Assembly (NCBI RefSeq): GCF_002571385.2
Contig: NW_019218601.1
Coordinates: 5,987-69,986, forward strand
Source: Stylophora pistillata
Taxonomy: Eukaryota
Reading direction: 5' to 3'
DNA length: 64,000 bases
Shown here: positions 24,700 through 51,126 of the stretch, one piece after another
Layout of the letters: each line of letters opens with the position of its first letter
Numbering within the stretch: the stretch's first letter is position 1
Made by a program: the position numbers and the translations under genes
The notes under the pieces: generated by a model
Databases searched by the model: none
Told to the model about the DNA's origin: nothing
Seen by the model: only the letters and a program-made list of their open reading frames with translations

Positions 24700-27600
24700 T
24701 TAAAATTTCAAAATAGAACGAAGTAAGAGAAAATGTTTGTGTCCCAACATTTTTAACATCTTCGCCTGTACCCACTCGATGCTGTCCAAGCTACTAGCCG
24801 TGTCATACCAAAGAGGCTGGTCATCTGACACACATTCAAGTTTTTCCAATAATTTTTTCCCATTTAAGTGTACCATATCAAAGCTTTCTGGCCAATCTTC
24901 CCTGTCATGCAGCCTGGTAGTCAGTAAGTTAATTGTGCTTGGATTATTGGCACTAAGCACAATCTGCGTTCTGATCTATCAAAACTACAGGTTTTCGCAC
25001 AGGTTGTCGAAACGTCAATCACCACCACTCACAACTGTCCTTCTCAGGACTACACTCACCCAGTAGATCGCACTACACTTTCACACATGTTACCCCCCGG
25101 GTTCAAACCAATTACTGTAAAACTACATGAGTAAGCCCTACATAACCCCAAGGATGTTTCCCATTTTGGGGATGGTTTATTCCAGGCAACACAATTCATG
25201 ACCGTTAGTGTTAAAATAGTGACATGAACGACAAAACTGTAAAAATAAACGGAAAGAAACGAAAGCAGCTTTATTATTTACACAGAGAAAAACCTTGAAA
25301 TCGTTACAATAAATAACTTGGAAAAACATCAAATTATTTTGTCTGGTGCAATGCACCAAAAGGAACGTCGTTGGGTAAATTTTTCATCTTTTTGCAAGTA
25401 AGAACTTTTACAAAACTTATGAAAGCGTACAAAATATTTCTTACACTTAGTATGAACATTAAAGATATATCCAAGACTAACAAAACCGTGAGAGTTCGGG
25501 ATATCAACGTTCTATTTTCGTAAAATAATCTGAAAGTAAAACAAAGGACAAATACTATTGTCAAAGAACTGAAGAGATAAATTACATTCTGGTAAAAAAT
25601 GTTTCGAGAAAAACTAGAGACACTAAGGCAGTTTTCGCCTCGGCTTATAGCTGGTGCATATAGAGGGCAACTTTCTATAGAAACTGTGGTGCTCCTGCTA
25701 CGGTGGGGGGAGGTGGGGCGTAGGGGGTATATAGATGATTTGATTTATCAACTGAGTTTATAATGTAAATTGGCCACCGTAGAGAGTTTCAAAAGCTCAC
25801 ATTTCGAGCGTTAGCCCTTTGTCATTCTCTCTGACGAAGGGCTAGGTTGATAAAAACCAAAATATATTAAAATAAATTATTCATTGTTTTTGGTTAAAAT
25901 CATAAAGCAACTGGAGCAATTAGTGATTTGAATCAAAATCTAAAACCTTCACTCGTGTTTTCTCACGGTTAAGACATTTTCTTGCTTGTACCAAGAGTCC
26001 CCCTTGGCTCCTAGCTTCCTTCGATCTGTTTAGTAGCTGTGATTAATTTGGTTTCAGTCTGGTGACATGCAATTTAAAAGCGCTCTATCCTCTCTCTATT
26101 GTCTCATAAATATACCTGATAAATAAGAATCATCTTGTTTACGACAGAACTTGAACCTCTACAGTACCCGCACTGTAACCTTTCTGCTCAAAGAGAAACA
26201 ACAGGATTCAGATTTTCAAAATTCAGAATAAGTTTACTTACAAAACTAACAAAAGGAATATCACAAAACGATAACGACACTTACCACCAGAACTCGGATT
26301 TTTTTGTTTCTTCTCACGAGTTTGGCGATTCGAGTCTTCTCCTAAAAAAATGAGTACAGCTTAACGGCCACATCATCATTGAGTCAGGAAACGAAATAGC
26401 CGAAAACAGCCGATTTGGGCCAGACCGATAGCGCCGAATGTAGCCGCTACAGCCGAGTACATCCTCGTCCAGCCGAATACATTCTAAAATAACCGATCTA
26501 ACCTATCTATGGTGTGGCGATGAAAGTCGGCTCTATTACGGACGAACTATGGGAAAACTAGGAGCGTCATTTTCTGACAAAAAAGCATTTTAAGATTTCC
26601 AGTAATTTAACGCTGTTTATGGATGCTACATATCTAGCTACAGTTACAAGAACATATATAACACAAAAATTTCTCGTACCTTTTTGTTGGCAGAATTCGA
26701 GTACACAATGCAGCACTCAAAAGCCTGCAGTGGAAATTACAAAAACCGAAAACGGTTCCTTAGTAAATTGATTCTAAGTATTTTTACTAGACTAACAACG
26801 TGAAATTTGATCCTCAGAGCGCCAGAAGCAGGATTTTCGCGCGCAGTTTCCAATTTCAGAGATTGTATACTCAATCTTGTCAACACAGTCCCTTCATGCT
26901 TATTCAAACAACACAAATACACAGCCATATCCATGACTAACCTGGGCAGGAGGAGAAGTGTAAAACTTGTCATCAAGCACCCTCAGGTCTCTTTGATTCA
27001 CTTCCCACACATCACCAATGTCCAGTAGTCGGATGCAAATCTAAAGATAACATTTAAATAGTCAATTTGTTAGAAGCCCCAGGAAGAAAATTATATATTT
27101 TTTTCAGTTTGTAACCATTCAAATGATCCGTTACAAACCAAGACTCGCACAGGAAAACCAATTTACCTTTCCCTTGTCCAGGGTTTTCTCTACAAGAGCA
27201 CGGTACCAATACTCATCTCGCCCCTTCACGGCACACTGCTTGTATATAAAAATCTCACTCGGATCAAGGGTTTTATTGCTGGCTTCTATGTGGGTCCTGT
27301 CATAAAATAACTGCTTGATTAACAACACACTTTCACTGCTAAACAAACTCGATCGAGAGGAGAGGAAGCTAGGAGACCGATTCCTCCATATAAGCCAAAG
27401 GGAATCCCCAAAAGGAATCCCCAAAAGGAATCCCCAAAAGGAATCCCCAAAAGGAATCTTCTACTTTCAGACTCTATGTGTCTCCAGTCAAAAATACTGC
27501 ACGCATTTCGTGTGGCGCTCCGTCATTCCTTTGGACCACTGTTTGACATTGCATGGGCGTCTGAGGGGGGCTTAGGAAAAACGAAAGACGCTACTCCTTG

Positions 27601-28107
27601 AGATACGGAACAAAACCCAGAATTGCATGGACGCGTTTGAAAAACCCTTCATTTGGCTTATGGCCGCCAAGCACACAAAATACTTACCCCATGCGTACCA
27701 TGGCATCCACGAAGGCATCTTCCTCCTTCCTGGCTCGAGTAATTTTGGCCCAAAAAGTGCCACTGTTTGTCAAGTTCTCTTGAACTATAATAGAATGTTC
27801 TTTCCCTACAACAATGAGAAAACATGTAGACATGTATTTAAGAAACCATCATCAAAGGTCAGCGCTACTTCCAACGCAAGAGTCTTGCTTATACACTTTA
27901 AACCTCGCCGTCTTGTCCACGAGAGTGTGCCTTAAGATTAGGATTTTCATAGAACTCATCCACCACCATTCGAGTTTTGGATTTCAAACCATTGGCAGGC
28001 AAAGCGCGAGGAATTCAGATGACACACCATAAAACCAAAGGAAAGAAAAGGGAGAAAAGCTAGGGCACATATCGCAAAATATCGCTCCTTCGACACGATA
28101 GCGTCAA

Positions 28108-28140
<33 letters not shown>

Positions 28141-31100
28141 CGAATATTTATCCAGGATAGCCCTTCAGTACCAAGTACTGTTATCAACGGGGTCCTGCTG
28201 TTAAAAAAAAAAAACCTGTTGATAAAAATATATATATATATATATATTTAACATAATTGTAACATAAATAAGAATAAACAAAAATATTTAAAGAAGACAT
28301 GCACCAGATTAAAACCGTTAAAAACTACAATAAAAAATCACCAGTAAAAAATCGTACAGGGCTTTCCTAAATAAAACTTTAGAATTAATGTTTCTCAAAC
28401 GTAATGGCAATGAATTAAAAAGTGAAGCACCCAAGAAATAAAAACTAAGGCGCGCAAAATCCAACTTCACCTTGGGTAGTTTTATTGATTTCCCATTGTT
28501 TCTAGTGTTTAAGGAATTATGGTGAAAACGTTGAAAATAATTCGTAAATGGGAAACATGTAGTTCCATTGAGGCAGACAAAAACAAAATAGCACGCTTTC
28601 TTTTGCAGAAAGCTGTCAATTGTTAAAAACCGAAGATCGCAGTTCTTCGGACTACATTTCGGGGTAATGACTTTGAGGCTTCGTTTCTCAATGGAGCGGA
28701 TCATGCGCTTGCGGGACTCTGGCCATCCAAGACTATTACAGCCGCAATACATAAATATTGGCATAATCATCGATTGGTAAATTCGTTGGGCACAAAATGT
28801 ATCAATGCTGGAACGGACACGCCGTAAGAGGCAACAAAATTCTGCTAAATCATTATCCATTTTTCACTGCACAAATATTTGTCAAACACTTGCTAATTTT
28901 CCTAGTTCATGTCAGTAGATGCAGTCATTTACTGTATGCTTCTTTGTCGAGCTTTCCACGTATACCATTGTCTAGGGTATTAGGGTCTTTGCAAAACTCT
29001 CCTGCTTCCCTCCGCCCCTCCTTAATCAGGAGATGCCCATATATATCAATGATTAAAACCAGAGTGATACTTGCAGGCCTGGATAAAATTCATGTCAAAA
29101 AAAGCTACTAGGCTGTGACTTCCTAACCTATCTCAAGGGGTACGTAGTCAGATATCACTAATTCCTCTGTGCTTTCTTGAGAAAGTAGTTCTGGTGACAG
29201 CAAGCAACTTGAAGACACTTCCCGACACGACTCGCTATTAGCCAGACCTGCAATGGCTGGGATGTCATCTGACCTGCCTGCGATGGTAACAAACAAAACA
29301 TTTCTTTAGTACCAATTATTGTGCAACGACATTACTTAATGGCAATTACTTACCATATTTAGTACCAACAAAGCACGCATGAATTTCGACATTTATGGCT
29401 AACAACAAATCTCTCTCTTGTACGCTCCAAAAACAATACTTAGTGCAATGGATAACCACTCTCCTCAAGAACCAAAAGGAACATAACGAACTTAACGCAT
29501 TGCATTTCCTAAAATTCATTTCATAATTGAAACGAAAGAAATTAATTTTCTAAAAGATCTTCTCACCATCAGCCACTGAGGTTGTCTGAATGAGCCTAGA
29601 ATTGGAAGGTTCTCCAGGTTCCAGATCACTTAAGTCACCGGGGTACTCTGCCATTTCTGTTTTAAGACTGTTCTTGAGAAGATTCTCTGTATTCCTGTCG
29701 CTCAAGGGTGGGAGCTGGGCTGATAAGTCTGTGTCAAGACTTGTTTTGGAAGGTGTTCTAGTTTCCCAGTCACTCTCGCCAGAGGGCCCAATTGCAGTTC
29801 CTTCAACAAGACTTGTTTTAGAAGGAGTGCCCGTCTCCCAATCACTCCCACCTATGAACTGAGATGCGAATTCTTCGTCTAAGCTTGTTGTCGACATGGT
29901 TGGCACAACTCCTCTTTGTTCTTGAGGAAGACTCTTATCCGGAATTCCTGCTTCCAAGTCACTTGTGGCACAAAGTGGTGTGACTGTATTAACTCTTTCA
30001 CCTGTCTTTGATGATGTTTCCAGAGGACGTATATCAGTGGACTTAGCAACTGTATCAGTTTCAATGGTAGTCTTGGAAAGAGAACTTGACGCATTGGTTG
30101 GTCCACCCACATCCCTCTGAAGACTTGTTTTGGAAGGTGTCCTAACTTCCCAATCACTCCCATCATTGGACGGGACAGTTTCTACTCCTTCAAGACTTGT
30201 TTGGGAAGGTGTCCTAGCCTCCCAATCGCTCCCATCATTGGAAGGAACAGTTTTATCTCCTTCGAGACTTGTTTTGGAAGGTGTTCTAACCTCCCAATCA
30301 CTCCCATCGTTGGACGGGACAATTGCTGCTTCTTCAAGACTCGATTTGGAAGGTGTTCTTACCTCACAGTCATTCCCATCACTGGACGGGACAGTTTCTG
30401 TTTCTTCAGGACTTGCCTTGGAAAGCATTCTACATTCCCGATCATGCGCGTCACCGGGAACTTCAGCTGTCGCTCCAGCTGGACTTATCGGGGAAGAAGA
30501 ACGATTTTCCTTGTCACTGGATGTAAAGGGAGCACGACTGTTGTTTTCAGTTAACGGGTCCCTTTTTTCCATGGGAATTTCCTCCTCACTATTCAAGGGC
30601 TGAGAGGTTATATCATTGACCACTGCAATGTCTACATTTTTAATATTACCATCAGGTTCCTTATCAGCAGAAATTGTGTCTTTCTCAATTTTAATCCTAT
30701 TGGGATCACTGCTTTCCAGCCGCTCCATGACTGTTGCATTAGGCCGACGAGAGTCATACTCATTAATAACGACTTCTTTGTCACTCTCGATTTGATCAGC
30801 ACCCTGGTCACTGTGACCAGGTCCATCACTGCTGACATTTGTGGAATCGACAGATAGGTTTTCACAGTCATCGCTGTTGACCTCACCAGAGATCTCTGTC
30901 TTGTCGTTACCAGTACCTGGCCCTTCAGAAGTTTTCAAGCTGTCTTCCATCTGATAAGAAAGTACAATAATGCGCCTTAGTCCTTGATGAAACAAACAAA
31001 AAATCTGACTGCTTGGAATCAAACCAGTTATCTCCTCATTACCAATCCCTTGCTCTTCCACCGAACTATAGGGTGCTTGGGGTGAGTTAGACTGTCCAAG

Positions 31101-34100
31101 ATAAAAAAAGTTAATGAGACTAAACCCTGGACAATTATGGGAGCAATTTGTTACCACCAAAAGTTTAATACCCGACAGAAATTTAGACAAGGGCTTGCAC
31201 TATTCTATAAAGTATCTTTCTTTTGATAGTCCATTTGGCATATGGGAGAAAAATAAACACGTGAAAAAATAGTAATAATAAAATAAAGTCGATAACAGTT
31301 TGTCACTTGAGGGAGCCGCAATCGACTCTTGACCATCCCAGAGGTGGAGAACGTCTGTATCTTACTCCTTTGAGTGAGTATGCAGTCTTCGGTTTAAGTA
31401 TTGACATTCTTAAAGTTGTTTAGAGTGTAAAGTTACTGATCTTTTTTTATCTCGAGACATCTAATAATTGCTTGAACATGTATGTCCATGCGGTTTAAGA
31501 GGTAAACTATGACGGACATCTAAATTGACAATGTAACCGGTCAAAATAACCGGCAAACTGTAAGTCGGTCCAAATAAAATAAACTTCAGCCTAGCCAGAC
31601 ATATTGTTCTTTTTCCAGCGTTTTGAACACTTTAGGCAGCTAAAGCCACTCGTGTTTAAGTACATGTATGCACTTACTTCTTGATCCCAGTCTTCTTGAG
31701 ATGCTGGTGAATCATCACTTAACTCCTCTTTGGCAATTTTCCACCAAGGTAGCTCGGCATCACTCCTGAGCTGTTTCTCTTTTTGATTGTCGATGTTTGA
31801 CTGGCGAGTATTGATAGCATCTTGCAAAATTGAGTTGAAGTAAGTGATACTTTCGTAAGCCTTCACAATGCTCCGTCCCACGTCATTAGCAATTTCGCAG
31901 CCGTCCATAGCTTCCGTGAAGTACCCGACAGAGACACGACTTTCAGGTCTAAACTTTATATCCTTAAAATAAAGGCTGTTAGCATAGATCCACCTGATGT
32001 CACATCTTCCAACCATCTTTCCACCAAATTTAAAAGGCTCATTGAGCATGGGACAGCTCTGTGTCGGGTCAACAGAGGTTAACATTTCAGCCAAACCGCA
32101 GAATTTGATGAATTTATGTCCTGCAAACAGGAGGAACACTGAGCCCCTGCCTCCATTTCTAACACTGTTCAAGGCCAAATTTAACATTCTATTAGTTCTC
32201 GTATTGGAGCACCAAATATCAAACTTCATGGCTTCGATAATTCGCCTGGGGTCTGACTTGATCAACACAAAACGAGCATATGGTAGTTCCTCCATGCAAA
32301 TCATACTCACAGAGCATTTGTTCAAGATGTAGTTGTACATTGCGACATCAACAACACCAACAGATAAGTGGTTATCTGGCACTGCGTTGCGATAATGCTC
32401 GATTGAAAACACTTCATTGACTTCTGGCCCCAAAGTGGGAGCCTCACTTCCCAGGTGCTGAAAAGTGGATCCTTTTTTGACCAAGAGCTCATAAGCAGGC
32501 ACATCAGTGACCTTTTGCTCTGTCTGCACCTTTTTAGCCACGCCCTCAACTGAATATTCAGAAGTAGGCTCATTTTGTGTCTGGCTTTCAGATGTGGGCA
32601 TGTTTTCAGCTTGATCCTTAAGCCCTGACATCTGATTACCCTGGTGGTCATGCACGAGTACATCTTTGGTTTGGAGTTCAGATGCTGGCATATCATTGGG
32701 TAGGTGGTCAGAACTAGGTACATTGTCGACCTTACTCTCAGACATAAATAATGCTTTGGCAAATGAATCTTGCCCAGGAAGGTGCAGTATACCAGGGATT
32801 CTGGCTTGTTTGGACGCAGGTAGAGAAGATATCTTGTCTAACACTTTATCCCTTTCTGGGGATAAAGGGACAAACTCTTCAGCATCGGGACGAAGTGTTT
32901 GCTTGCTACCAATGATTTCGGCATTGACTGAAATTTTGTCTTTACCAGTGACCTTCTCGTCAGAAACACTGTGCTCAGTGTCTGTCTTTGCCACCGTCTC
33001 TCCAAAGGATACGGCATGTTCACTGTCTACCTCTTGAGCAAGATTGCATGTTCCACCAGTGTCTTGAGTCTGTACTTCACTGGCATCTTTTTGAACCACA
33101 GGTTCTTCGGCATTTGCTTTTGCTTCTCTTGGCTGAGCAGGATGGTCCTCAAGCAAAACAATTAACCACAAATAAGCCATCAAATCTAACGCTGCCACCC
33201 AATACTTGTAATAGCTCTGCCTTTACGTAAATGAACAGTTACCTGGACTTCACAGGCATGAAAAGTGGGTCAATGTAAAAATTGATCTCACTGACTTACA
33301 TATTAGTTCTTTTGGATTGTCTGTCATATGACAATTAAGTCTAGGTCTGGGATGACCCCCTGTCTGTCATATGACAATTAAGTCTAGGTCTGAGATGACC
33401 CCCCCCTGTCTGTCATATGACAATTAAGTCTAGGTCTGAGATGACCCCCCTTGTCTGTCATATGACAGTTAAGTCTAGGTCTAAGATGACCCCCCTTGTC
33501 TGTCATATGACAGTTTAGCCTAGGTCTAAGATGACCCCCCCCCATGAATCAAACCAAGACTTCTTGATCTAGAGTCAAGCACACTTAGCACTAGGTAATC
33601 ACTGTCATTTCAACTGTAAAATTATCAAAACAGGCTTTCATTTACGTGATTAACGAACATTTCATATCCTCCTTCTTGAACAAAAGGTGGTGTGTGCATG
33701 AAAACAGTATTCAACTAAAATGTTGATTTGAAACAAAAGCACTGCAGCCTATGAATTTGCACATTTAAGACTGTTCACTACTCTATCAAATCCCCATGGA
33801 AAAAAATAACAGTGACAATCTGTAGTCATACCTGGAGGTAATAGTACCACAATAGTGAAATAATGTCAACTGGATGTCAACTATATATTGTGAATAAAAT
33901 TGTATGCATATTCTCTTCTATTTGCTGACATTATCTGTAAAATTCAATGCACTTGTATGTATTTCTATTCTCACCTCTGTTGCAAGCTTTTGTTCCTCCA
34001 CTGAAATAATGAATACAACAATAAACAATGCTTCAAGCTCTGGCGAAATAAAATCATTACACTAACCGCCTCCCGGTTAGCTCAATGGATAGAGCGCTGG

Positions 34101-37100: not shown

Positions 37101-40100
37101 CGGTACACTTTCAACCCTGGTACGGCAGAACTCCTTGCTCTGTCTGTTAAGAGCTGCACAAAATGTACCTACTTTTGGCACAACAGGGTTTCCAAAGCCA
37201 TGCTTTTTATAATGGTTACTAGAAGAAAAACAAATGCTCCTTGTCATGAGCAATACTAGCAAAGACCTATTCTCCACAAGTGCACAAGCTGAACTATACT
37301 TTACCGGGTATTTAACTTAAGAATTGTGTTTCCTCATACCAATTCAGTTGACAGTTATTGAGAATTATGCATGTTACAGAAAGATAAAACTGCATAGAAT
37401 TTATTAATAGTTGTCCATTTTTAAATGTTTTGTCTGATACCATAAAAGCCTCCCTTTAAAATCAAAATCATGGTAGAACCTTGTGCTCTTAGTAAAAAAG
37501 ATGAGATAAACTTGTTCATTCATATGATACACTGGTTTAGAGGCGTTTTGACATCTCTTGTAAAACTTGTTTTAAAAGTGACCATACTGTTTTCCACACA
37601 TTTCCAACAGCACTGACAATAAGAATCTGTTTAGAAATCAAGAGCTTCTACAGTTGGTTATCATTTCCTTTATTCTCACAACCTCAAAGTTTGATTCAGG
37701 GATGATAATAAAAGGAGAAATTAGATACTAGTCACTCTTTGGATTCAAAAGGGTCAAGGAAGTAGTCATACTTTATGGCCATTACAATCTCCTTTCTCAT
37801 TTCTATTGCTGGTTCTCCTGTCTTGGAAATCCAGAAGGATCCATTCCTTGCCAGTGATCCAATTACGCTGACAGGGAAGACCTCTTTGCCTTTGGAAAGT
37901 CAATAAAACCGATTAAAATTATTCCACCATCTCTTAGTTAAGTCTCTCTCTCTCTGATGTTTTAAAACTAAAAATAACAAACAATTTTAAGTCAACTGTA
38001 CCTTCCATCTCCTTACTGAGTTGAACTTTAGGTTCCTCAGGCACCTCTTGCTCTTCATTGCCAGGTAGTGTGTCCTGGGCAGGGACAGAGGTTGGCTGTT
38101 GGAAGGAATCTGACTCAGAGCTGTCTGGTTGCTTTATAGTCACTGTAGCATTTGTATCTGCAACAGCTTGATCAAGTTCACTGCTACTTTCTTTATCTGG
38201 AGTACTACATTGTATCAGCATGTTGGACACCTAAAAAATGCAAATGTGCAAATTGGGACAAAAATAAACTCAACAGTGCATTCCCAAATGACTAAACACC
38301 ATACAGAAAAAAAAAAAATAATAAGTAAATTGATAAATAAAAGCTGTCTATTACTACAAACTGTCAACTCTTCCATTTTTTTTTGCAAGCCTTTCTTCCC
38401 ATCCACAAATATATTCACCAGATTATTTTTGACTTACTGTATTTACCTACATGCCTAACAAGAATCTATCGACCAAATCTTTTTACCAAACACGATGTTA
38501 TGAACGTTGCCAATCCTTGCTTGACCATCATAGAGTCTCTGCGGCTCAGTGCTAGAGCATCAGAACGCCAATTCCAAAGGTTTGAGGTTTTAATCCTCAT
38601 GGAGACTCATATTTTTTTTCTTGTCTTACACTCATAACTGCAAAGACTAGCAAAAACTAACGATAAAAACCGATGTTTCGGTGTCATCATGACGCCATTG
38701 TCAAGGAGAAATAAAAAATGAAGTTTGTAGCAAGGTGTAACACTAAATTAGCATAAATATGTTACGAGCTAATTAAACAAATACTTTTGCGCGAATTGAA
38801 TCGCTTTGCACGTTCAGAGTGGGTTTTAAGTCCCTGATGAGAAGCATTTCGTTCACCAAACAATCGAACTGTTACTACACTTTTTCAGAATGCTAAAACG
38901 TTTCAGTAGGTCTTTTGGGACTTCGCTGTGCCGTTCATGGTAGTGTTTATATATTGAAGATGCCTTTCGTTTATGTCCATCCACGCGTGTGTGTAAGTGT
39001 CCGCGTGTATAGCCCACATAACCCGCATCACACAGGTCACATTGAAATTGATAAACGACGCGTTGTTGGTTGACAATCTGTGGCTTGATTTCTCGTACTT
39101 TAAGATCTTGGCCAACTTTGCGGCTAACAAATACTGGCTGGACAGTTGTCTGCACCTTCATGCTAAGATTCTTGAGCTCTTTCTTAACATAATTTGCTGA
39201 TTCCTGATCTTTGAAAGGTATGACCACACGAACAATGGATATTGGTCCTTTGGGCGTCTGTGTGGGCTGCGTACCAACAATTCTTGATTGTAAGAAGGTG
39301 TTAATGGTAGAATTTACCAGGCGTTCCGGGTATTTAAGCCGTGCGAAAACTTTCTTTAGGCGATCACACTCATCAGAGAAATGGGCCCAGGAGGAAGATA
39401 ATCGGTGTGCGCAATCCAGCATAGTTTTCAGCAAGCTCCGTTTGTAGCAATTGTCTACATGGCTTTGGTAGTGTAATAGTAGGCCCGTGTTTGTTGGTTT
39501 CACATATACCTTGGTTTCAATCCGACGTGCATGGTTGATTAGTTCGGTGCCAAGGAAAGGAAGCTTGCTGTTCTTCTCCACCTCCACGGTGAATTTGACC
39601 AAAGTGTGATTTCTCTGATGAGTGTGATCGCCTAAAGAAAGTTTTCGCACGGCTTAAATACCCGGAACACCTGGTAAATTCTACCATTAACACCTTACAA
39701 TCAAGAATTGTTGGTACGCAGCCCACACAGACGCCCAAAGAACCAATATCCATTGTCCGTGTGGTCATACCTTTCAAAGATCAGGAATCAGCAAATTATG
39801 TTAAGAAAGAGCTCAAGAATCTTAGCATGAAGGTGCAGACAACTGTCCAGCCAGTATTTGTTAGCCGCAAAGTTGGCCAAGATCTTAAAGTACAAGAAAT
39901 CAAGCCACAGATTGTCAACCAACAACGTGTCGTTTATCAATTTCAATGTGACCTGTGTGATGCGGGTTATGTGGGCTATACACGCGGACACTTACACACA
40001 CGCGTGGATCGACATAAACGAAAGGCATCTTCAATATATAAACACTACCACGAACGGCACAGCGAAGTCCCGAAAGACCTACTGAAACGTTTTAGCATTC

Positions 40101-43100
40101 TGAAAAAGTGTAGTAACAAGTTCGATTGTTTGGTGAACGAAATGCTTCTCATCAGGGACTTAAAACCCACTCTGAACGTGCAAAGTGATTCAATTCGCGC
40201 AAAAGTATTTGTTTAATTAGCTCGTAACATATTTATGCTAATTTAGTGTTACACCTTGCCACAAACTTCATTTTTTATTTCCCCTTGACAATGGCGTCAT
40301 GATGACACCGAAGCGTCGGTTTTTATCGTTAGTTTTTGCTAGTCTTTGCATTTCTAAATCTTTATTGCACTCATAAACTTCATTTTTTATTTCCCCTTGA
40401 CAATGGCGTCATGATGACACCGAAGCGTCGGTTTTTATCGTTAGTTTTTGCTAGTCTTTGCATTTCTAAATCTTTATTGCACTCATAACAAGACAAAAAA
40501 AATCATATTTTTCAAGAATCTAACAGGTATACTCAAGTGCCAGTCTTGCAGAGAGAACATTCTTATATTTTTTTTTTCTTTGTCCCACACTCATGACAAG
40601 ACAAAAAAACATCTTTCTCAAGAATCTAACATGTATACTCAAGTGACAGTCTTGCAAAGAAAACAATCATAATAACAGTAAATGTTTTCCTACTTTTGCC
40701 AGATACTGAAAAGCTTTTTCAACTGCTCCTGTACAACCTTTGATTTCTGCAACTCTCCTTTTGGTGGCTAATTGCATTTGCACCAACTGGTTTAAGGTTT
40801 GCTGCAAGCAAAATTAATTACAGTTCAGAATCACCTTAATTTTTCTTTCAATTATTAGGTAGCCTTATCTTTTCCAAACTTGGCAGAAAGATAAATATAT
40901 CTTATTAACCAAGCGCGAGGGCCGTACTGGGAGAATATTGGCCCGAGGTCTTGACAGTACGGACCGAGGGCCGATATTCTTCCAGTGCGGTCCCGAGCAA
41001 GCTTGGTTAATAAGAGATTTATTATACGACTGAAGTTCAAAGGGACACAAGTGCAGTATCATTCGGGACCATTCAGGACAGTGCCCGGTCCAATACTGAG
41101 AGAATATTGACCGGCAATAGAGCATTTTTATTGGTTGATTTTAGTTATTGGCCCTCTGACAGCCCGAGTCGTGTAATAAATAAAATTATACCTTCTCTTC
41201 TTCTTCTGTGTACTTTAACCTTGTCAGCACACTTTGGAGCAATTCATTCTCCACCTCAAGTAACCTGTTTGAAAACACAAAATGTAGCATGTCATGAAAC
41301 ATAAAGTTCTCCATCTTCATTGGACAAACAATGATTTTTTTCTCAAAATAAAAAAGTAGATTTATTGTAAAACTTAGACATGTTCAAAACTTAAAAAAAA
41401 AAACCTTTTTGAAGTAAAACTGCCACACTGATAAACCCAAATACCATGACAATATGTTCACATGTGAACTCATAAATGACATGGTCATTATGCCAGGAAC
41501 AAACCCTGGTGAAAATCCTGGCCAGGATCCTGCAGGATCCTGCAGGATCCTATAGGATCTTGAATAGGAACAGGATCCTAACTAGGATCCTGTATAGGAT
41601 TTAAATCCTGACTAGGATCCTAGAAGGATAACAAATTCTGAATAGGATCCTAAGTAGGATCTTAGAGATAAATAGGATCCTATGTACGATCACTGGCCTG
41701 ATCAGGATCCTGGGCAAGAATGATATCCTGGATATATAGAGGATCCTGTGTAGGATCATTATCCTGATCAGGATCCTAGGCAAGAATAGGATCCTGGATT
41801 ATATATAGGATCCTGTGTAGGATCACTATATTCTGATCAGGATCCTGGGGAAGAATAGGATCCTGGACATCTATAGGATCCTATGTAGGATCATTATCCT
41901 GATCAGGATCCTGCGCAAGAATAGGATCCTGGATATATATAGGATCCTATGAAGGATCACTATATCCTGATCAGGATCCTGGGAAAGAATAGGATCTTGG
42001 ACATCTATAGGATCCTATGTAGGATCACTATCCTGATCAGGAACCTGGATATATATAAGATCCTATTAAGGATCGCTATCCTGATCAGGATCCTGGATAT
42101 ATATAGGATCCTATTTAGGATCACTATATCCTGATCAGGATCCTGGTCAAGAATAGGATCCTAGATATATATAGGATCCTACATAGGATTACAGCATTAT
42201 AACACTTTCCTAGCATTTTAGTCTACACCTTTGATGTTTGATGTCACATTGTAATTAGTACCCGCTTTTGTATTACATCATATTGTAAATAATTTATTCA
42301 TCTATTGTATGCTATATAATTGTTCATACTCAGTTACTCATTAACTGAAGATGGCATATGCATGCCAAAACATGTCTTTCAAAAAAGTTGTATATTTCTT
42401 ACAATGTCTACCATACTTGCTATTACCGCGACCTTGTGGAATTATTGTTTTAACCGAATTTAAAAAAAGGTGAAGGTAAGTCTTAAGATTATAACCTTGG
42501 AAGAAGATCAATTATTAATCCTGACTTCATACACAACACCAAAATGGCCTCCACCGCCTAGGATGATTTGCTAGATGTAGGGGAATTCCATGCTGACAAA
42601 GATGATTTAAAACAGGTCAAGAATCACACAAAAGATTACATAGCAGGACTAAAGGAAATAGATAAAGAAAAATTACGAGCGCATGTCATGGAAGCTTTTT
42701 TGGCATTTGTAAGATTTTATTACAAGAAATCTTTGAAGCCTAATCCGTGTGATTGCGCTGATTGTAAAAATGGAAGGAGAAATTACAAGAATCCGACAAC
42801 AGGAACATTAAAGACTAAAGTCACAGCAGATAAATTGTTAACCTTAATTGTAATTTATATTATTTTCTGTGTATTCTAGTGGAGTGAGTTTGTTTTAAAT
42901 AAAGTTCCTATTTTTAATAATATTCGGTATTTTTCGTGACTATTACACCATGTTTTTATCATACACTTGAACTTTTTATCATACCTTTGAACTTGTACAA
43001 GATCCTACAGGATCCTATAGGATCTTGTACAAGATCCTACAGGATCCTATAGGATCCTACAGGATCCTACAGGATCTTGTATAAGATCCTGAATAGGATT

Positions 43101-46100
43101 TCAGGCAAGATCCTAGTAAGGATCCTATCAAGATCTTGCACAAGATCCTGAACAGGATTTTCACCAGGGAATCCAGAATTTCATAGATACAGGCATATCA
43201 AAATAATCAATACTAGATTTTCATTTACTGTTGCACCTTAAGCTTTTTGCAAGGACAACAAATACATACTTTTCAATGTCTTGGACATCTTGTGACAATC
43301 GCCGTTGTTTCCCCTGTGGAAGAAATTACACACCTATCATTTCTATGATCACTGTGATAGTATATGTAGAGAGCATATTTGGTGAAAGAACTAGAAATAT
43401 ATTTGCATTCAAGACCCAAGTAGTGTATCTTCCATATCCTCACTAATGACAAACTTAAATACTACTTAAGCCTGGTTCACACATACAATACAAATGCAAG
43501 TGCAAATGCAAGGATTTACAAGTGTTACAATTACCCAATGCAAATGCAAATGCAAGCGTCAACACAAAAAAGGAAGAAATTTTCATTTACTTAAGCTTGC
43601 ACTTGTGTTTGCATTCAATCCCCACAGATGTGAACTATGGAAATGCTTTAAATGCAAGATGAAAAACACAGGTTCCATTGGTTCCATTCCACCATGGTAA
43701 ACTTCAAAATAAAATGGTGTTGATGTCTTCCTTCATTCCCAAAGAAAAACTTGTGGAAAGTAATGACAAATTTCCTGTACTTTTTGACAGAAGTTCTCCA
43801 AAATTTAAAGGAAAATCAAAGAAAAGAGTCTTCCCAGGAAAGATGTAACCAGAGAAGTGGGCCCAAGAGACAGTATTTTTTACAAAAGCATCTAAACGTA
43901 AACAGCATCTCTATATTGATAAAACGGCTTTCAAACCATTCAGTAAACAATTAAAGCATAAATTTTCTCTTCAGAGCTGTGCAATTGAAAATGAATAATA
44001 AATATATTGTAGCAAACTCTATGGCAGAGGCTAAATCATTGTTGGCAATCTTTGAAAAATACTTCCAATGCACTTGCATGTCTCCCTTTCTTTGTGAAAT
44101 GTGAACTTGCTTGCATTTACATTCACAACACATGTATGAACCAGGCTTTTAAAGCTAAATTAGTTTCTCTAGTGTAATGCAAAGAGGGGGAATGATGCTC
44201 TCCTTTGGATGAATCAGAGTCATCCACACCCCAACATTAGTGTTTACCAGAATTGGCTGACATTAACTGTTATATGCACCACTGTATTCATCCTATTCTT
44301 TCTGTATATGTGACACTTTACTTTTCCTTCTGATTCATCAACAGCTCAAATCAAGCAAATCTTCTGCTAATGCTCATCATTTGATAAATCCACAAAGCAA
44401 CACAACATGAGTGTGTGTAACATGATAGCATTTTTCATAACGAAAATTTTCCGTCATAGACTTGTTGCTTTTTCAAATTCAAAAGTTCTTTGATTTACAC
44501 AACAACGTTACACAAAGAAAACTTATGGTACTGAGTATCGAAGACACATCGGTCCCACAATTTTTTTGTCAATGGAACTCATGTAAATCGTATATGCACG
44601 TCTGACTGCCCTGCATCTGAGCCTATGAAATGAGTCTGCACAGTTAATGTATGTCTGAGTGGCACTGTAAGTGGAAATAGTACAGTGAAAGTGTAATGTC
44701 TAATCCTAATTCATCCAGGTTTCTTTATTCCTTTACTCAGAAGCCTTTTAGGGTAATTTTTCTCCATTGGTTTTAAAGAATCCAACCATCAAGTTATAAA
44801 CGAAAAGAATTATACTGAGTTTTTTTTTTTTTTTTTTGAAAGCTTTCAAATCTGAAATCAGAGTTCACACTTAGTCTGGTTTACTCGTATATATCTTAAC
44901 CCAGGGAATCTGGCAAATGAAACACTGGATCACCAGATTTCTCGAACTGGAAAATAGAAAAGCTACATACTGTATGTCTCCAATAACCCATAATTACAGC
45001 CCAATCTATACAAGCTGTCACCATGGGGAATGATGGGGTGACCCCTTAGTACAGGTTGACCAGCTAATGACTTGCATGATGTTTGTCTGTAATGTTTGTC
45101 CTAAACATGGAATAAATTTTAATTGAGATTATTCTTAATTCTGTCTGAGTAGTTTGGCTTTAAGTGTCAATTCAATAGAGGTGGAAGACAATACAAACAG
45201 GCCATTTGGACTCGGTCAAGGGTGACCACGAACACGTAATAGAAGTGAAAATTACAGTACTTAAAAGTAAAAATTTTGGGACATTTACACAACTGCTTTA
45301 TACAGAGTGGCAGCTTAATGCAGCAGACCTTAATGCAGGTGTAACTACAAGTATAATAAAAATTTGGATGTTTTACCAAGACTTCTATTTGTTCATATCT
45401 GTGTGCCTTGAAAACATCCAGGCTATGCACTTGAATATTACACTGAGGGCACAGACAGATAATTCTATCTGTAAGATAAAAAAAGAAATCATAAATGTAA
45501 CTGTTGTCAAAAAAGTGTCTCTTGGTTTCATGTTAACTATGAACCAGTGGCATAAAATATACAGTACAACTTGTGCTTAGTTTCATTAGCTGATCCTGCT
45601 TCAAAAAAAACTTGCAATTGTTTACAGATTAAAGAATCAGGTTTAAAAGAATAAAAATTAATCCATGCATGAACAGCAAAAGTCAAGTCCCAGATCAGCA
45701 ATGAGACAGATTCGGATTTTACTTTTCCACATTGTTTGTGTCATTACCCATTCAGATTTTGATAACCACAAGATAAGTATTGACCTGAGCGCTGTGCCTC
45801 TTAAGGATTAGAAAATCCAAAGGATATTTTGGCCACAGTTACAGGAGTAGGAAACAATATGCCACAGTTCGGATATAATTTATGAATCTTGTATGTATTC
45901 GATGTGTTTAATATGCCACATATACATTGACATTTGCAGCAGTTGCACATGTCTATTGAAATATGATGCAAAAATTTGAGCCACACAAAACAAAAGTGTT
46001 GGTCTGTTGACCTCGTTCATTCTTATTCAGGTACAGCGTCATGGTACATATCCAGCAGACCTGGTTCTTTTTTGAGTGTTGGTGCCTAGATCTACTGCAA

Positions 46101-46527
46101 GTCTGAATTCCTTTCTAGTGTTGATGCTTAATTTCTACGCACCAAGATATTAATTTTAGTAAGTCTAACTGTTTTTTGTTGATTTTTTTGTTTGTTTGTT
46201 TGTTTTTTTGTTTAACCACATTTAGTATTGTACTCATTTTAGCTGTCATTTTAATCTTTACCGGGTGCAAATCACGTGCATTCACCTTGGACAAAATCAA
46301 CATGTTTACCATGTGTTTCCTGCACCAAAACATGCTTACATGCATGATTTGCACTGATACAAGAACAGATCACTGGTTTGGAATACAAATCTTTCCAAAT
46401 AAGCAAACAGTGTGAAATTTTAGGAGGTGACCTTACCATATTTGCAATCAAAACACTTGAAATCCGCTCGCTTCTCAGGATGATTGTAGCACATAGGCGC
46501 GTTTAGCGACAAGCTCGCAGCAGCCAT
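24700..46527 (-). CDS. Multi-exon B-box / coiled-coil / Tudor / PAM2 / YTH / Tudor protein (RNF17/Qin-like with a YTH domain)
   Basis: Manually spliced gt-ag exons (approximate): 46527-46437 (Kozak gccATGG), 45468-45377, 43313-43270, 41264-41192, 40801-~40700, probable ~38430-38364, 38230-38002, 37889-37772, 37218-37089, 36607-36505, 36339-36289, 35541-35480, 34828-34734, 34001-33976, 33147-31678, 30950-29567, 29277-29128, 27806-27699, ~27311-27167, 27039-26942, 26723-26680, 26341-26285. The 3' end is uncertain (~25325 or ~24700). B-box: CYNHPEKRADFKCFDCKYDRIICLCPQCNIQVHSLDVFKAH. Tudor 1: GTFCAAL...FCRTRV...KIRFLDYG...AFQACL. YTH: RFVLIKS...DIWCS...VFLLF...FCGLAEM...DIRWIY. Tudor 2: CAVKGRDEYWYRALV...IRLLDIG...PAQAFECC. 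Reading phase across 40700-38230 is not fully resolved. Confidence 0.8.
25005..25120 (+). mobile_element. Short PLE-derived/SINE-like repeat fragment
   Basis: ggttgtcgaaacgtca...ccttctcaggactacactcaccc...cccgggttcaaacca pattern, resembling common cnidarian PLE termini. Confidence 0.45.
25665..25860. mobile_element. Interspersed repeat (tttctaNagaaactgt...ggccaccgt family); related fold-back copies at 34990-35150 and 36058-36240
   Basis: Three diverged copies share tttcta(a/t)agaaactgt...tatcaact...tgtaaattggccac. The intronic copies fold back on themselves. This copy carries ttcgagcgttagccctt and ctgacgaagggcta, pieces of a minimal hammerhead-like motif also seen at 60090-60125. Confidence 0.6.
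27401..27458 (+). repeat. 13-bp tandem repeat (ggaatccccaaaa) x4
   Basis: Directly visible in the sequence. Confidence 0.9.
28110..28860 (-). mobile_element. CR1/L2-type LINE 3' portion with microsatellite tail (intronic)
   Basis: ORF 28318-28860 reads LLRRVRSSI...IYQSMIMPIFMYC...NTRNNG...SFYFLGASLFNSLP. An (aat)n tract at 28110-28140 is the (att)n tail on the minus strand. Confidence 0.85.
29730..30400 (-). repeat. Coding 72-nt (24-aa) tandem repeat, 4 tandem copies plus 2 downstream copies
   Basis: TVPSNDGSDWEVRTPSKTSLE-type units within ORF 29550-31190. Confidence 0.9.
31815..32290 (-). other. YTH domain (YTHDF-like) within the large exon of the Tudor gene
   Basis: Aligns by eye to the YTHDF consensus (VFIIKS, KYxIWCST, VYLLFS, HFCGVAEM, FDVRWIF, SRDTQE, TSIFDD). 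Here these read FVLIKS, KFDIWCSN, VFLLFA, KFCGLAEM, CDIRWIY, AMDGCE, NSILQD. Confidence 0.88.
33317..33543 (+). repeat. ~44-bp minisatellite x5 (tgtctgtcatatgacaattaagtctaggtctgagatgacccc)
   Basis: Five tandem copies, each containing the palindrome tgtcatatgaca. Confidence 0.9.
34066..34340 (+). mobile_element. tRNA-derived SINE
   Basis: A-box tagctcaatgg and B-box ggttcgagcccc in a tRNA-like head, followed by a non-tRNA body (cagggtcttaaaataattgagaag...). Confidence 0.75.
38535..38637 (+). mobile_element. tRNA-like SINE interrupted by the Penelope insertion; it resumes at ~40489
   Basis: Head ggctcagtgctagagcatc...ttgtcttacactcataa continues as caagacaaaaaa after the PLE. An uninterrupted tail copy is at 40565-40620. 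Confidence 0.55.
38638..40488. mobile_element. Penelope-like element, two 5'-truncated copies in inverted orientation (GIY-YIG endonuclease)
   Basis: The minus copy (38638-39603) has the RT thumb (KFTVEVEKNSKLPFLG, KVYVKPTNTGLLLHYQSH) and GIY-YIG (VVYQFQCDLCDAGYVGYT). The plus copy (39604-40216) is nearly identical, and its 3' segment is duplicated (40262-40376 / 40374-40488). The sequence cactcataa flanks both sides. Confidence 0.93.
40895..41025. mobile_element. Hairpin/palindromic MITE (Crypton-like)
   Basis: tcttattaaccaagc...gcttggttaataaga inverted arms, with inner gggccgtactgggagaatattggccc / gggccgatattcttccagtgcggtccc. Confidence 0.6.
41504..43169. mobile_element. Non-autonomous DNA transposon with CCC termini (EnSpm/CMC-like) and AGGATCCT-rich subterminal arrays
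   Basis: 17-bp TIRs ccctggtgaaaatcctg / caggattttcaccaggg with a putative 2-bp AA TSD. Dozens of aggatcct motifs lie in 41520-42190 and 42995-43160. Confidence 0.8.
43468..44148. mobile_element. Harbinger-like MITE
   Basis: TIRs aagcctggttcacac / gtatgaaccaggctt, with subterminal aaatgcaag repeats. Confidence 0.65.
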
Positions 46528-46808
46528 GGCCACCAACTTCACACAAGAAGCTACTTTATGTGACCTTCTTTAACGTTTTCCAAAAAAAACAAAATTTATA
46601 ATCTTCCACGAAAGTTACCCCCGTAACGAGAATTCACGCTCGTTACATTCTCAATTCTCATAATGACAACCCACTGTAAACCAACTGGTGATTGTCTTAC
46701 GCATGCTTCGAAGTCTCGCGCGTTTTTTCGCCCGAAGATGACGAATCTTCGCCTGACTCTTCGGGAAAACTTCGCCAACTTTAGAAATTCCCGATACAAC
46801 GAATGCTC

Positions 46809-50600: not shown

Positions 50601-51126
50601 GGCTTCAAGTCGTACAAGATTGCTTCCCCTTCCATCTTGCTGTTTAGCCAAATATTGTGTCGATTTTTAAAAGCAAGCCTATCAAGGTACACTTTTTGCG
50701 AATAAAGGGGAATTGTGTTTGCGGCTCTGCCATTTATTACACTAAGAAAACATCATCTTTCTCAACTTACTAGAAAGGTTGCGTAAGTAAAAAGGAAGGA
50801 GTAAAACTTCAGAAATCTCCTCAATTTTGAATTTAGCTTATTTGTCCGTGTTGTAAAGAATTCTTGATGCGTGGGGTTTCATACGCAATAATCGAAGGTA
50901 CTCTTCTTCCGATTGGCGGATTAAATTCGTACCTAGATCTCTTTCCTGGCAAAGCCCTCCTCGTCAGTGAGAGATCTGGGTACAAGATTAATGGCAGATT
51001 CCTTCCCTCCAAGATTAACCAAACGTCTCACTTTCTATTTGGTTTTCAGGTGAGAAGTTCCGTTATGGAATGACATTTGGGTACAGCACTCAGAACGCAA
51101 CGCCTATGAAAGCCCTAACCGCCTAA
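47608..51126 (+). CDS. CIMIP2: FAM166/CIMIP2-family ciliary microtubule inner protein (~300 aa)
   Basis: Exons 47608-47663, 47804-48033, 49992-50531 and 51050-51126 have canonical gt/ag sites and consistent phases. Motifs: TPDPYHIPGYCGYCPQFKYQIGETFG, MVPNYTGYIP..HYFGKPYA, SGYTGFVP, VPHYTGHVPGEKFRYGMTFG. The paralog (A/B) is not resolved. Confidence 0.9.

What the first reader, a model, noticed from the sequence alone, without database searches (positions are those of the whole stretch)
24700..46527. B-box/coiled-coil/Tudor protein fused to a YTH fold and a PAM2 motif: candidate link between piRNA/germ-granule scaffolds and m6A/poly(A) control
Seen in sequence: spliceable exons give B-box - CC - eTudor - PAM2 - YTH - repeat array - eTudor in one polypeptide, and the exon phases are consistent from Tudor 1 through YTH and the repeats to Tudor 2. 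Established: B-box plus extended Tudors marks RNF17/TDRD4 and Drosophila Qin/Kumo, which are piRNA ping-pong regulators. Canonical animal YTH proteins are YTHDF, YTHDC1 and YTHDC2, and I know of no Tudor-YTH fusion among them. Inference: a lineage-specific germline RNP adaptor that couples Piwi/Tudor granules to methylated or motif-bearing, PABP-bound mRNAs.
Basis: partly seen in the sequence, partly recalled or inferred. Interest (0 to 1): 0.9.

Follow-up and report, generated by a model that had tools for sequence, protein, structure and literature searches.

The report
Coral Tudor–YTH fusion gene, already described
This is a real 23-exon coral gene (Stylophora pistillata LOC111345078) encoding a zinc-finger/coiled-coil/Tudor/YTH/Tudor protein; the architecture was already reported for corals in 2020, and its methyl-reading pockets look remodelled, so its function remains open.

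Summary
The window is Stylophora pistillata. A 23-exon minus-strand gene (46660-25246, all 22 introns GT-AG) encodes 1572 aa, identical to RefSeq XP_022808069.1. Three full-length intronless contigs from three sequencing runs show one mRNA covering B-box, helix, eTudor 1, PAM2-like motif, YTH, repeats and eTudor 2.

Pfam on the whole protein gives Tudor x2 (3.7e-26) and YTH (5.7e-14). The B-box and PAM2 hits are below their cut-offs. Predicted structures match YTHDF YTH domains and piRNA-pathway extended Tudors.

The architecture is not new. Bell, Wolf and Koonin (BMC Biol 2020) reported B-box/multi-eTudor/YTH proteins in corals.

New here:
- An ortholog exists in the anemone Nematostella (LOC5517765).
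- The YTH pocket keeps one of three cage residues, and the substitutes are invariant across corals.
- Both Tudor methylarginine cages are incomplete.
- The PAM2-like motif is invariant in corals; docking to the coral's own PABP MLLE gives only weak support.
- An acidic tryptophan motif (DWE) occurs in every ortholog. It is tandemly amplified here (5 copies) and in a close relative (13-14).

Germline expression and Piwi, PABP or m6A binding remain untested.

The parts
25246..46660 (-). Whole transcription unit of LOC111345078, 23 exons. Exons: 46660-46437, 45468-45377, 43313-43270, 41264-41192, 40801-40694, 38230-38002, 37889-37772, 37218-37089, 36606-36505, 36339-36289, 35542-35480, 34827-34734, 34000-33975, 33147-31678, 30950-29567, 29277-29128, 27805-27688, 27296-27167, 27040-26942, 26724-26680, 26341-26285, 26183-26116, 25529-25246.
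   Evidence: Alignment of intronless contigs L002-L004 to the window; GT-AG at all 22 introns.
26139..46527 (-). Coding span: ATG at 46527, stop codon at 26141-26139, 1572 aa.
   Evidence: Script translation is 1572/1572 identical to P0200 = XP_022808069.1; coordinates.
45401..46491 (-). B-box-type zinc finger, aa 13-53, split over exons 1 and 2. Ligand pattern C-x2-H-x8-C-x2-C-x8-C-x2-C-x4-H-x7-H.
   Evidence: Pfam zf-B_box E 0.0028, below cut-off. All eight Cys/His are invariant from Nematostella to corals.
38207..43298 (-). Long helix, aa 67-144, exons 3-6; coiled-coil candidate.
   Evidence: AlphaFold2 model: one helix spanning residues 67-144, pLDDT 62-82.
33981..38026 (-). Extended Tudor domain 1, aa about 205-405, end of exon 6 to exon 13.
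   Evidence: Pfam TUDOR. Model pLDDT 76-90. Foldseek matches BmPAPI, TDRD1 TD3 and TDRD2 eTudors at E 4e-13 to 7e-13, TM up to 0.76 over about 190-215 columns. Cage versus SND1: F740 to N, Y746 to C, Y763 to F, Y766 kept, N768 to F.
32866..32895 (-). PAM2-like motif LRPDAEEFVP, aa 492-501, in a disordered stretch of exon 14.
   Evidence: Pfam PAM2 E 0.084, 13 bits against a cut-off of 20. L, R, A, E, F and P are invariant in 12 coral sequences and the motif is present in all named coral orthologs. Complex test with the genome's own MLLE gave weak support.
32776..32796 (-). Invariant motif PGILHLP, aa 525-531, in the disordered region; function unknown.
   Evidence: Invariant columns P118 G119 I120 L121 L123 P124 of alignment A2; pLDDT below 50.
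31765..32370 (-). YTH domain of YTHDF type, fold aa 667-868, Pfam match aa 698-837 = 31858-32277. Pocket residues R709, W719, L775, F779, K780, F781, M785.
   Evidence: Pfam YTH E 1.2e-14. PDB sequence search: YTHDF2 E 9.1e-13. Model pLDDT 70-87 with the pocket loop below 50. Foldseek: YTHDF1/2/3 E 8e-14, TM 0.71-0.82. Pocket alignments.
31678..31701 (-). Acidic tryptophan motif SQEDWDQE, aa 890-897, the last codons of exon 14.
   Evidence: S, Q, E, W, D and E are invariant in A2. Present in all orthologs; Nematostella has HQDWDL.
29745..30356 (-). Array of 24-aa units of the form VPSNDGSDWEvRTPSKTSLE within exon 15. There are five DWE motifs (aa 1115, 1139, 1163, 1267, 1291) and six TPS[KQ] sites. 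The tandem core lies at 30120-30423.
   Evidence: TRF period 72, 4.2 copies, 83% matches. Motif positions. A 12.3-copy array of the same unit lies in the close relative L015.
26142..29140 (-). Extended Tudor domain 2, aa about 1405-1572, end of exon 16 to exon 22.
   Evidence: Pfam TUDOR best stretch 1420-1530. PDB sequence hits to TDRD1 and TDRKH eTudors at E 8e-6, aligned over about 107 residues. Of the cage, only the Tyr of the WY pair is kept, and Asn is replaced by Asp.

Best explanation
Shown: this is the annotated S. pistillata gene LOC111345078. It is a single 23-exon transcription unit whose mRNA encodes, in order, a B-box-type zinc finger, a roughly 78-residue helix, extended Tudor 1, a roughly 260-residue disordered segment, a YTHDF-type YTH domain, a roughly 500-residue acidic disordered linker, and extended Tudor 2. 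The disordered segment carries a PAM2-like motif and an invariant PGILHLP motif. The linker carries acidic Trp motifs. The gene is conserved, with collinear exons, across robust and complex stony corals and in the sea anemone Nematostella. It is therefore an old hexacorallian gene and not a mis-joined model. It belongs to the coral eTudor-YTH class described by Bell et al. 2020. Inferred mechanism: it is a multivalent RNP-granule scaffold or adaptor. The B-box and helix would mediate self-association, as in TRIM-like proteins. The two eTudors have incomplete methylarginine cages and would bind partner peptides (possibly PIWI N-termini) without needing methylation, as TDRD2/TDRKH does. The YTH domain would bind RNA through a remodelled but strongly constrained pocket, with R709, W719, L775, F781 and M785 invariant among corals. 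Its specificity is probably not canonical m6A in this lineage. The linear motifs in the disordered regions would recruit effectors: PABP through the PAM2-like motif and unknown partners through the DWD/DWE motifs. Pocilloporid corals have amplified the DWE motif in tandem.
For: Gene and transcript. Domains. Folds. Conservation of the whole architecture: named models from Desmophyllum, Oculina and Montipora; a 4149-nt intronless contig from another coral; three unnamed assemblies with collinear Tudor-YTH-Tudor exons; and Nematostella LOC5517765 with TUDOR 1.2e-28 and YTH 2e-07. Prior description. Pocket substitutions, with the substitutes invariant. The same genome keeps a separate canonical YTHDF exon with every canonical residue (177 bits). 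Tudor cages. PAM2-like motif: invariant in corals and located in a disordered region. Complex test against the genome's own MLLE gave weak support. The ipSAE was 0.37 against 0.02 for the best of 3 controls. The runs agreed in at least 89% of contacts and the partner's pLDDT was at least 52. That mark was reached by 51 of 78 solved complexes and 2 of 108 mismatched pairs. At 0.60 or under, however, it was reached by only 5 of those 78 and by all 4 mismatches that passed (of 180). Solved PAM2-MLLE complexes exist, so the pass may also come from the model's memory. W motifs.
Against: No expression, localisation or binding data of any kind were obtained, so every functional step is inference. The PAM2 HMM score is below its cut-off, and the Asn of the consensus is Arg. 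Nematostella keeps only PPEFVP. The pocket loop is modelled with low confidence (pLDDT below 50), and two alignment methods place the second cage position differently (L775 by MAFFT, K780 by hhalign). A hydrophobic W/F/M pocket might therefore still take a methyl group. Orthologs such as Montipora have Trp at the hhalign position, giving a YTHDC1-like W-W-M set. The B-box is below the Pfam cut-off and was modelled with low confidence. Incomplete Tudor cages do not prove absence of methylarginine binding.
Confidence: 0.55

Rival explanations
1. Canonical double methyl-reader, as the first reader and Bell et al. proposed. The YTH domain reads m6A on mRNA or piRNA precursors and the eTudors read symmetrically dimethylated arginines of PIWI proteins. 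This would couple m6A-marked, PABP-bound RNAs to germ granules.
For: The YTH and eTudor folds are genuine. The first cage Trp (W719) and the basic residues equivalent to R411/K416 are kept. By the hhalign register, complex-coral orthologs keep a Trp at the second cage position. YTHDC1 works with a W-W-L cage (from my knowledge of the family), so Met at the third position need not be fatal.
Against: In this gene Y418 is deleted, D422 is Arg, W486 is Lys or Leu, W491 is Met and R527 is lost. Tudor 1 keeps 2 of 4 cage aromatics and Tudor 2 keeps 1 of 4; both lack the Asn. The same genome has a fully canonical YTHDF.
Confidence: 0.2
2. GW182-like effector. The PAM2-like motif together with multiple acidic Trp motifs in a disordered region recruits PABP and deadenylase complexes (CCR4-NOT, PAN2-PAN3). 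RNAs bound by the YTH domain would then be deadenylated or stored.
For: The PAM2-like motif is invariant in corals. DWD/DWE motifs are present in every ortholog, including Nematostella. They are amplified to 5 copies here and 13-14 in a close relative, with 90% identity between repeat units. The combination of PAM2 and W motifs in GW182/TNRC6 proteins is established knowledge, recalled from memory.
Against: No test of W-motif binding was possible. The MLLE test gave only weak support. W motifs of GW182 are usually flanked by Gly, Ser or Thr, whereas these sit in a fixed longer unit with a TPSK site, which could equally be a phosphorylation module or another ligand site.
Confidence: 0.15
3. Gene-model artefact: two neighbouring genes (a Tudor gene and a YTH gene) wrongly joined, or a read-through transcript.
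For: The PAM2+YTH exon is a large symmetric phase 0-0 exon (1470 nt) among many small exons. It could in principle be skipped or be of separate origin. The 2017 annotation named the locus 'YTH domain-containing family protein 2'.
Against: Eight assembled RNA contigs from this species are collinear without gaps across Tudor 1, YTH and Tudor 2, or across YTH and Tudor 2. The same order is found in at least eight other coral lineages and in Nematostella.
Confidence: 0.02

Closest known systems
Coral B-box / multi-eTudor / YTH proteins of Bell, Wolf and Koonin 2020 (BMC Biol 18:159, PMC7641849)
   Same: Same domain order (N-terminal B-box, eTudors, YTH) and same host group (stony corals). This gene is a member of that class, and is possibly one of the sequences they saw.
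   Different: That paper gives the architecture only. It does not mention the PAM2-like motif, the W-motif arrays, the state of the YTH and Tudor pockets, or the Nematostella ortholog, and it calls the class coral-specific.
YTHDF1/2/3 (m6A readers)
   Same: Best sequence and fold matches for the YTH domain: E 9.1e-13; Foldseek E 8e-14, TM 0.71-0.82. The YTH domain is also preceded by a long disordered region.
   Different: Two of three cage tryptophans, the Asp that contacts N1, Y418 and R527 are replaced. There is a five-residue insertion in the cage loop. The protein is fused to Tudors, a B-box and a coiled coil, and the disordered region is acidic, not P/Q/N-rich.
TDRD2/TDRKH and Papi extended Tudor domains
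   Same: Top fold and sequence matches. Like TDRD2, the cages here are incomplete, which in TDRD2 goes with methylation-independent PIWI binding (established knowledge, from memory).
   Different: No KH domains and no transmembrane anchor. Two eTudors flank a YTH domain.
RNF17/TDRD4 and Drosophila Qin/Kumo
   Same: B-box plus eTudor combination. The nearest named Atlas clusters are RNF17-like and TDRD1-like with B-box, at score 0.84, a lead only. Qin Tudor 3 is among the fold matches.
   Different: No RING finger was found. There are two eTudors, not five. A YTH domain is present. Orthology was not tested by a tree.
GW182/TNRC6
   Same: A PAM2-type motif plus several Trp-centred motifs in a long disordered region (resemblance recalled from memory).
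   Different: No GW-rich Argonaute-binding domain, UBA or RRM. Here the W motifs are acidic DWE units inside a 24-aa repeat. No binding data exist.

Membership tests
YTH domain (PF04146) | Profile HMM match above the curated cut-off | tested here: met
   54.6 bits against a cut-off of 22.1 on the single exon; 52.5 bits on the full protein.
YTH domain (PF04146) | YTH alpha/beta fold | tested here: met
   AlphaFold2 pLDDT 70-87 over residues 260-461 of exon 14. Foldseek YTHDF1/2/3 E 8e-14, TM 0.71-0.82.
Canonical m6A-reading YTH (YTHDF/YTHDC type) | Three-residue aromatic cage (W-W-W, or W-W-L in YTHDC1) | tested here: not met
   Only W719 is kept. The second position is K780 (hhalign) or L775 (MAFFT). 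The third is M785. The loop is modelled at pLDDT below 50.
Canonical m6A-reading YTH (YTHDF/YTHDC type) | Asp/Asn contacting N1 of m6A (D422 of YTHDF2), plus Y418 and R527 | tested here: not met
   D422 is R709, Y418 is deleted and R527 is lost.
Canonical m6A-reading YTH (YTHDF/YTHDC type) | Selective binding of m6A RNA | not testable with these tools
   Needs a binding assay.
Extended Tudor (piRNA-pathway TDRD type) | Tudor HMM above cut-off | tested here: met
   92 bits in two stretches on the full protein. Single exons alone score 15-17 bits.
Extended Tudor (piRNA-pathway TDRD type) | SN-like extension wrapped around the Tudor core (about 180-200 residues) | tested here: met
   The Tudor 1 model matches eTudors over 190-215 columns, TM up to 0.76. 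Tudor 2 was tested only by sequence alignment over about 107 residues to TDRKH.
Extended Tudor (piRNA-pathway TDRD type) | Four-aromatic cage plus Asn for symmetric dimethylarginine | tested here: not met
   Tudor 1 keeps 2 of 4 aromatics, with Asn replaced by Phe. Tudor 2 keeps 1 of 4, with Asn replaced by Asp.
RNF17/TDRD4 - Qin/Kumo | N-terminal RING finger | tested here: not met
   No RING family among the Pfam hits at E up to 1.
RNF17/TDRD4 - Qin/Kumo | B-box zinc finger | tested here: inconclusive
   15.7-20.4 bits against a cut-off of 24.1 in all orthologs. The eight Cys/His ligands are invariant. The model has low confidence there.
RNF17/TDRD4 - Qin/Kumo | Four to five eTudor domains; orthology by tree | tested here: not met
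   Two Tudor stretches only. No tree was built.
PAM2 motif (PF07145) | HMM above cut-off | tested here: not met
   13 bits against a cut-off of 20, E 0.084.
PAM2 motif (PF07145) | Key positions Leu, Ala, Phe and Pro in a disordered region, conserved in orthologs | tested here: met
   LRPDAEEFVP. L, A, E, F and P are invariant in 12 coral sequences. The region is disordered. The consensus Asn is Arg. Nematostella keeps only PPEFVP.
PAM2 motif (PF07145) | Binding to the PABP MLLE domain | tested here: inconclusive
   Weak support: 0.37 against 0.02 for the best control. Runs agreed in at least 89% of contacts and partner pLDDT was at least 52. The mark was reached by 51/78 solved complexes and 2/108 mismatches. 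At 0.60 or under it was reached by only 5 of the 78 and by all 4 passing mismatches of 180.
Coral eTudor-YTH proteins (Bell et al. 2020) | B-box, eTudors and YTH in one coral protein | tested here: met
   compared with the text of PMC7641849.

The most novel reading that the evidence does not exclude
The protein is a cnidarian analogue of GW182 built on a Tudor/YTH chassis. On this reading neither 'reader' pocket reads methyl marks any more. The YTH domain binds RNA by another rule. A PAM2-like motif and a tandemly amplifiable array of acidic Trp motifs (5 copies in Stylophora, 13-14 in a close relative, one or a few elsewhere) recruit PABP and deadenylases or PIWI/Argonaute proteins. Valency is tuned by repeat number.
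Probability: 0.15. Interest if true: 0.75.

Novelty: already known. Interest (0 to 1): 0.35.

Why it matters
A Tudor-YTH fusion physically joins the two best-known methyl-mark reader folds of RNA biology, and Bell et al. used it to argue for how the piRNA pathway arose. This work shows that the gene is real at the mRNA level. It is also older than 'some corals', because Nematostella, a laboratory model with transgenesis and knockouts, has an ortholog. And the canonical reader residues are largely replaced by other, equally conserved residues. That turns a curiosity of domain architecture into a testable question: what do a constrained non-canonical YTH pocket and cage-less eTudors bind? The conserved linear motifs give concrete handles for pull-downs. 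The architecture itself, however, is not a discovery.

Tried and rejected
**Read-level evidence**
There is therefore no read-level or tissue-level expression evidence. Transcript evidence comes from Logan contigs found through protein look-ups.

**Homolog and literature searches**
- The third homolog search, with a full-length alignment, was capped at 8000 candidates. It returned only the Nematostella protein and a fish TDRD7A, so it says nothing about octocorals, medusozoans or other phyla.
- The Atlas search with the YTH part gave only generic YTH clusters.
- Paper searches for the accessions (LOC111345078, XP_022808069, PFX14217, A0A2B4RCZ5), for the SRA runs and for LOC5517765 found nothing.
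- The held supplements of Bell et al. and of the Stylophora cell atlas do not name the gene.
- The 2025 Tudor-family survey (PMC12147562) does not mention YTH.
- The search of earlier findings returned nothing.

**Ideas rejected**
- Rejected: that the PAM2-like motif was inherited from YTHDF. The genome's canonical YTHDF exon has no such motif.
- Rejected: that the DWE motifs are LC3-interacting motifs. The residue three positions after Trp is not aliphatic (from the sequences).

**Handling of the spliced model**
- The join was computed only inside scripts, to count identities with database proteins.
- Full-length and sub-domain searches used database ids (P0200) or natural transcript contigs (L003, L001) by reference. 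Window exons were searched one by one.

Full report
**What is in the window**

The region holds one minus-strand gene. The largest open exon (31591-33198) gives a Pfam YTH match of E 1.2e-14. Small flanking exons give only weak Tudor and B-box matches when scanned one at a time: E 0.007 and 0.026 for Tudor, and 0.042 for the B-box.

A search of 1.84 billion representative proteins with the YTH exon found six close relatives. Their clusters contained a 1313-aa Desmophyllum pertusum gene model with B-box, two Tudor stretches and YTH. That protein maps collinearly onto the window from 46527 to 26279.

A further search found full-length Tudor+YTH proteins of Oculina, Montipora and Stylophora pistillata. 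The Stylophora protein XP_022808069.1 (LOC111345078, 1572 aa) matches the window's large exons at 99.8-100%. The window is therefore from the S. pistillata genome, and the gene is already annotated. The 2017 annotation called it 'YTH domain-containing family protein 2' (PFX14217.1).

**One transcript**

Three intronless contigs assembled from three sequencing runs carry a 1577-aa ORF. They are L002 (SRR13022793), L003 (SRR13022794) and L004 (SRR10968448), each about 5.15 kb. They align to the window at 98-100% identity in 23 blocks from 46660 to 25246.

All 22 introns are GT-AG. The window's exons, joined only inside a script, translate to 1572 aa, identical at every position to XP_022808069.1. 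Five more 5'-truncated ORFs from the same protein cluster are collinear without internal gaps. A fourth full-length intronless contig (L001, SRR26904559, 4149 nt, 1298 aa) shows the same Tudor-YTH-Tudor mRNA in another coral.

The transcript ends at 25246, not 24700, and the stop codon is at 26141-26139. The PAM2+YTH exon is 1470 nt and phase 0-0.

**Domains**

On the full protein, Pfam gives:
- TUDOR 3.7e-26 in two stretches
- YTH 5.7e-14
- B-box 0.0028, below its cut-off

The eight B-box Cys/His ligands are invariant from Nematostella to corals.

An AlphaFold2 model of aa 1-405 shows a single helix over residues 67-144, a disordered stretch, and a folded domain at about 205-405 with pLDDT 76-90. 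Foldseek matches that domain to extended Tudor domains of BmPAPI, TDRD1, TDRD2, Papi, SND1, Tudor and Qin (E from 4e-13, TM up to 0.76, 190-215 columns).

A model of exon 14 shows residues 1-259 disordered and 260-461 folded, with pLDDT 70-87. The folded part matches YTHDF1/2/3 YTH domains (E 8e-14, TM 0.71-0.82).

**Prior description**

[quoted passage not shown] They add that B-box zinc fingers are present in the coral eTudor-YTH proteins, and they compare these with Qin. Only that paper and its preprint hold the three terms eTudor, YTH and coral in the searched library. The architecture is therefore known, though no experiment has addressed it.

**Spread**

Collinear Tudor-YTH-Tudor exons are present in three further unnamed assemblies (L008, L009/L010, L011) and in a close relative (L015, 75% identity).

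Stylophora, Oculina and Desmophyllum belong to the robust clade and Montipora to the complex clade (my knowledge), so the gene predates the deepest split among stony corals.

It also exists in the sea anemone Nematostella vectensis (LOC5517765, XP_048584030.1, 1254 aa). That protein has Tudor x2 at 1.2e-28, YTH at 2e-07, and 33% identity over the N-terminal 400 residues. The class is therefore at least hexacorallian, not coral-specific. Nothing can be said about other cnidarians.

Four alignments of the YTH domain were examined:
- phmmer against YTHDF2
- MAFFT against about 140 canonical YTH domains
- MAFFT including the genome's own canonical YTHDF
- a profile-profile alignment

All four agree on the following, in YTHDF2 numbering:
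- the first cage Trp is kept (W719)
- Y418 is deleted
- D422 is Arg (R709)
- W491 is Met (M785)
- R527 is lost

The second cage Trp is either L775 (MAFFT) or K780 flanked by F779 and F781 (hhalign). Both cases involve a five-residue insertion in a loop that the model predicts with low confidence.

R709, W719, L775, F781 and M785 are invariant across the 12 coral sequences aligned. The pocket therefore looks changed but constrained, not decaying. Montipora-type orthologs have Trp, and Nematostella has Tyr-Trp, at the hhalign position. Some lineages may thus retain a YTHDC1-like cage.

For the Tudors, alignment to SND1 and TDRD1 shows that Tudor 1 keeps two of four cage aromatics and Tudor 2 keeps one. 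Both lack the Asn. This resembles TDRD2/TDRKH, which binds PIWI without methylation (my knowledge).

**Linear motifs**

LRPDAEEFVP (aa 492-501) lies in the disordered region. It is invariant in L, R, A, E, F and P among coral sequences. It scores only 13 bits against PAM2 (cut-off 20), and Nematostella keeps only PPEFVP.

The genome's own PABP MLLE domain was found at G000:C507:140418-140615 (E 4.3e-28). The complex test gave weak support:
- ipSAE was 0.37 against 0.02 for the best of three controls.
- The runs agreed in at least 89% of contacts, and the partner's pLDDT was at least 52.
- The mark was reached by 51 of 78 solved complexes and 2 of 108 mismatched pairs.
- At 0.60 or under it was reached by only 5 of those 78 and by all 4 mismatches that passed (of 180).
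- Solved PAM2-MLLE complexes exist, so the pass may reflect the model's memory.

Other conserved islands are PGILHLP (aa 525-531), SQEDWDQE at the end of exon 14, and a DWE motif in the linker of every ortholog.

In Stylophora the DWE motif sits in a 24-aa unit that also carries TPSK, a minimal CDK-type site (my reading). There are five W-bearing copies. The close relative L015 has 13-14 copies, with 90% identity between units.

**Interpretation**

The shown facts are the gene, the mRNA, the domains and folds, the conservation and the residue states. The inferred mechanism is a multivalent RNP scaffold with these elements:
- self-association through the B-box and helix
- methylation-independent peptide binding by the eTudors
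- RNA binding by a YTH pocket of altered specificity
- effector recruitment by the PAM2-like and Trp motifs

I put the canonical double-reader model at about 0.2, a GW182-like effector reading at about 0.15, and a gene-model artefact at about 0.02.

**Limits**

Exons were searched by reference, and whole-protein work used database or transcript references.
- N runs in the window lie outside the gene and were left alone.

Noticed in passing
window 38853-39650 (-) and 39761-40216 (+), inside intron 5: Two ORFs on opposite strands with GIY-YIG endonuclease similarity: E 0.00024 (21.8 bits, just under the cut-off) and E 0.066. They are probably remnants of Penelope-like retroelements in head-to-head arrangement.
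   Followed up: partly
L015 12637-13522 (unnamed close relative, 75% identical YTH exon): The 72-nt repeat encoding VPSNDGSDWETRTPSKTSL is expanded to 12.3 copies at 90% identity, against 4.2 copies at 83% in the window. This is large copy-number variation of a coding minisatellite between sister lineages.
   Followed up: partly
G000:C677:85749-86159 (+) (L012): The same genome has a canonical YTHDF gene whose YTH domain and P/Q/N-rich disordered region lie in one 489-aa open exon. It has all m6A-cage residues and no PAM2-like motif.
   Followed up: partly
window 40263-40488: A perfect tandem duplication of a 112-nt unit (2.0 copies, 100% identity) in intron 5. Intron 3 holds minisatellites built on GGATCC-containing units (41523-42146 and 42992-43076).
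   Followed up: no
window 33317-33540: A 45-nt minisatellite (5 copies, 93% matches) in intron 13, just upstream of the PAM2+YTH exon.
   Followed up: no
window 28318-28860 (-), intron 16: A 180-aa ATG-initiated ORF with no Pfam match. Its sequence looked to me like the C-terminal tail of a retrotransposon reverse transcriptase, but this is not supported by any search.
   Followed up: partly
window 61353-61730 (+) and 62248-62796 (+); 50078-50647 (+): Neighbouring plus-strand genes: two exons of a caspase (Peptidase_C14, E 3.1e-08 and 5.8e-34) and an exon with a CMI2B-like ciliary protein match (E 2.8e-05).
   Followed up: no
L002-L004 versus window 46527-46542: The assembled transcripts carry an in-frame ATG five codons upstream of the RefSeq start (1577 against 1572 aa). 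They differ from the reference protein at 12-17 residues, consistent with other individuals or populations of the species.
   Followed up: partly
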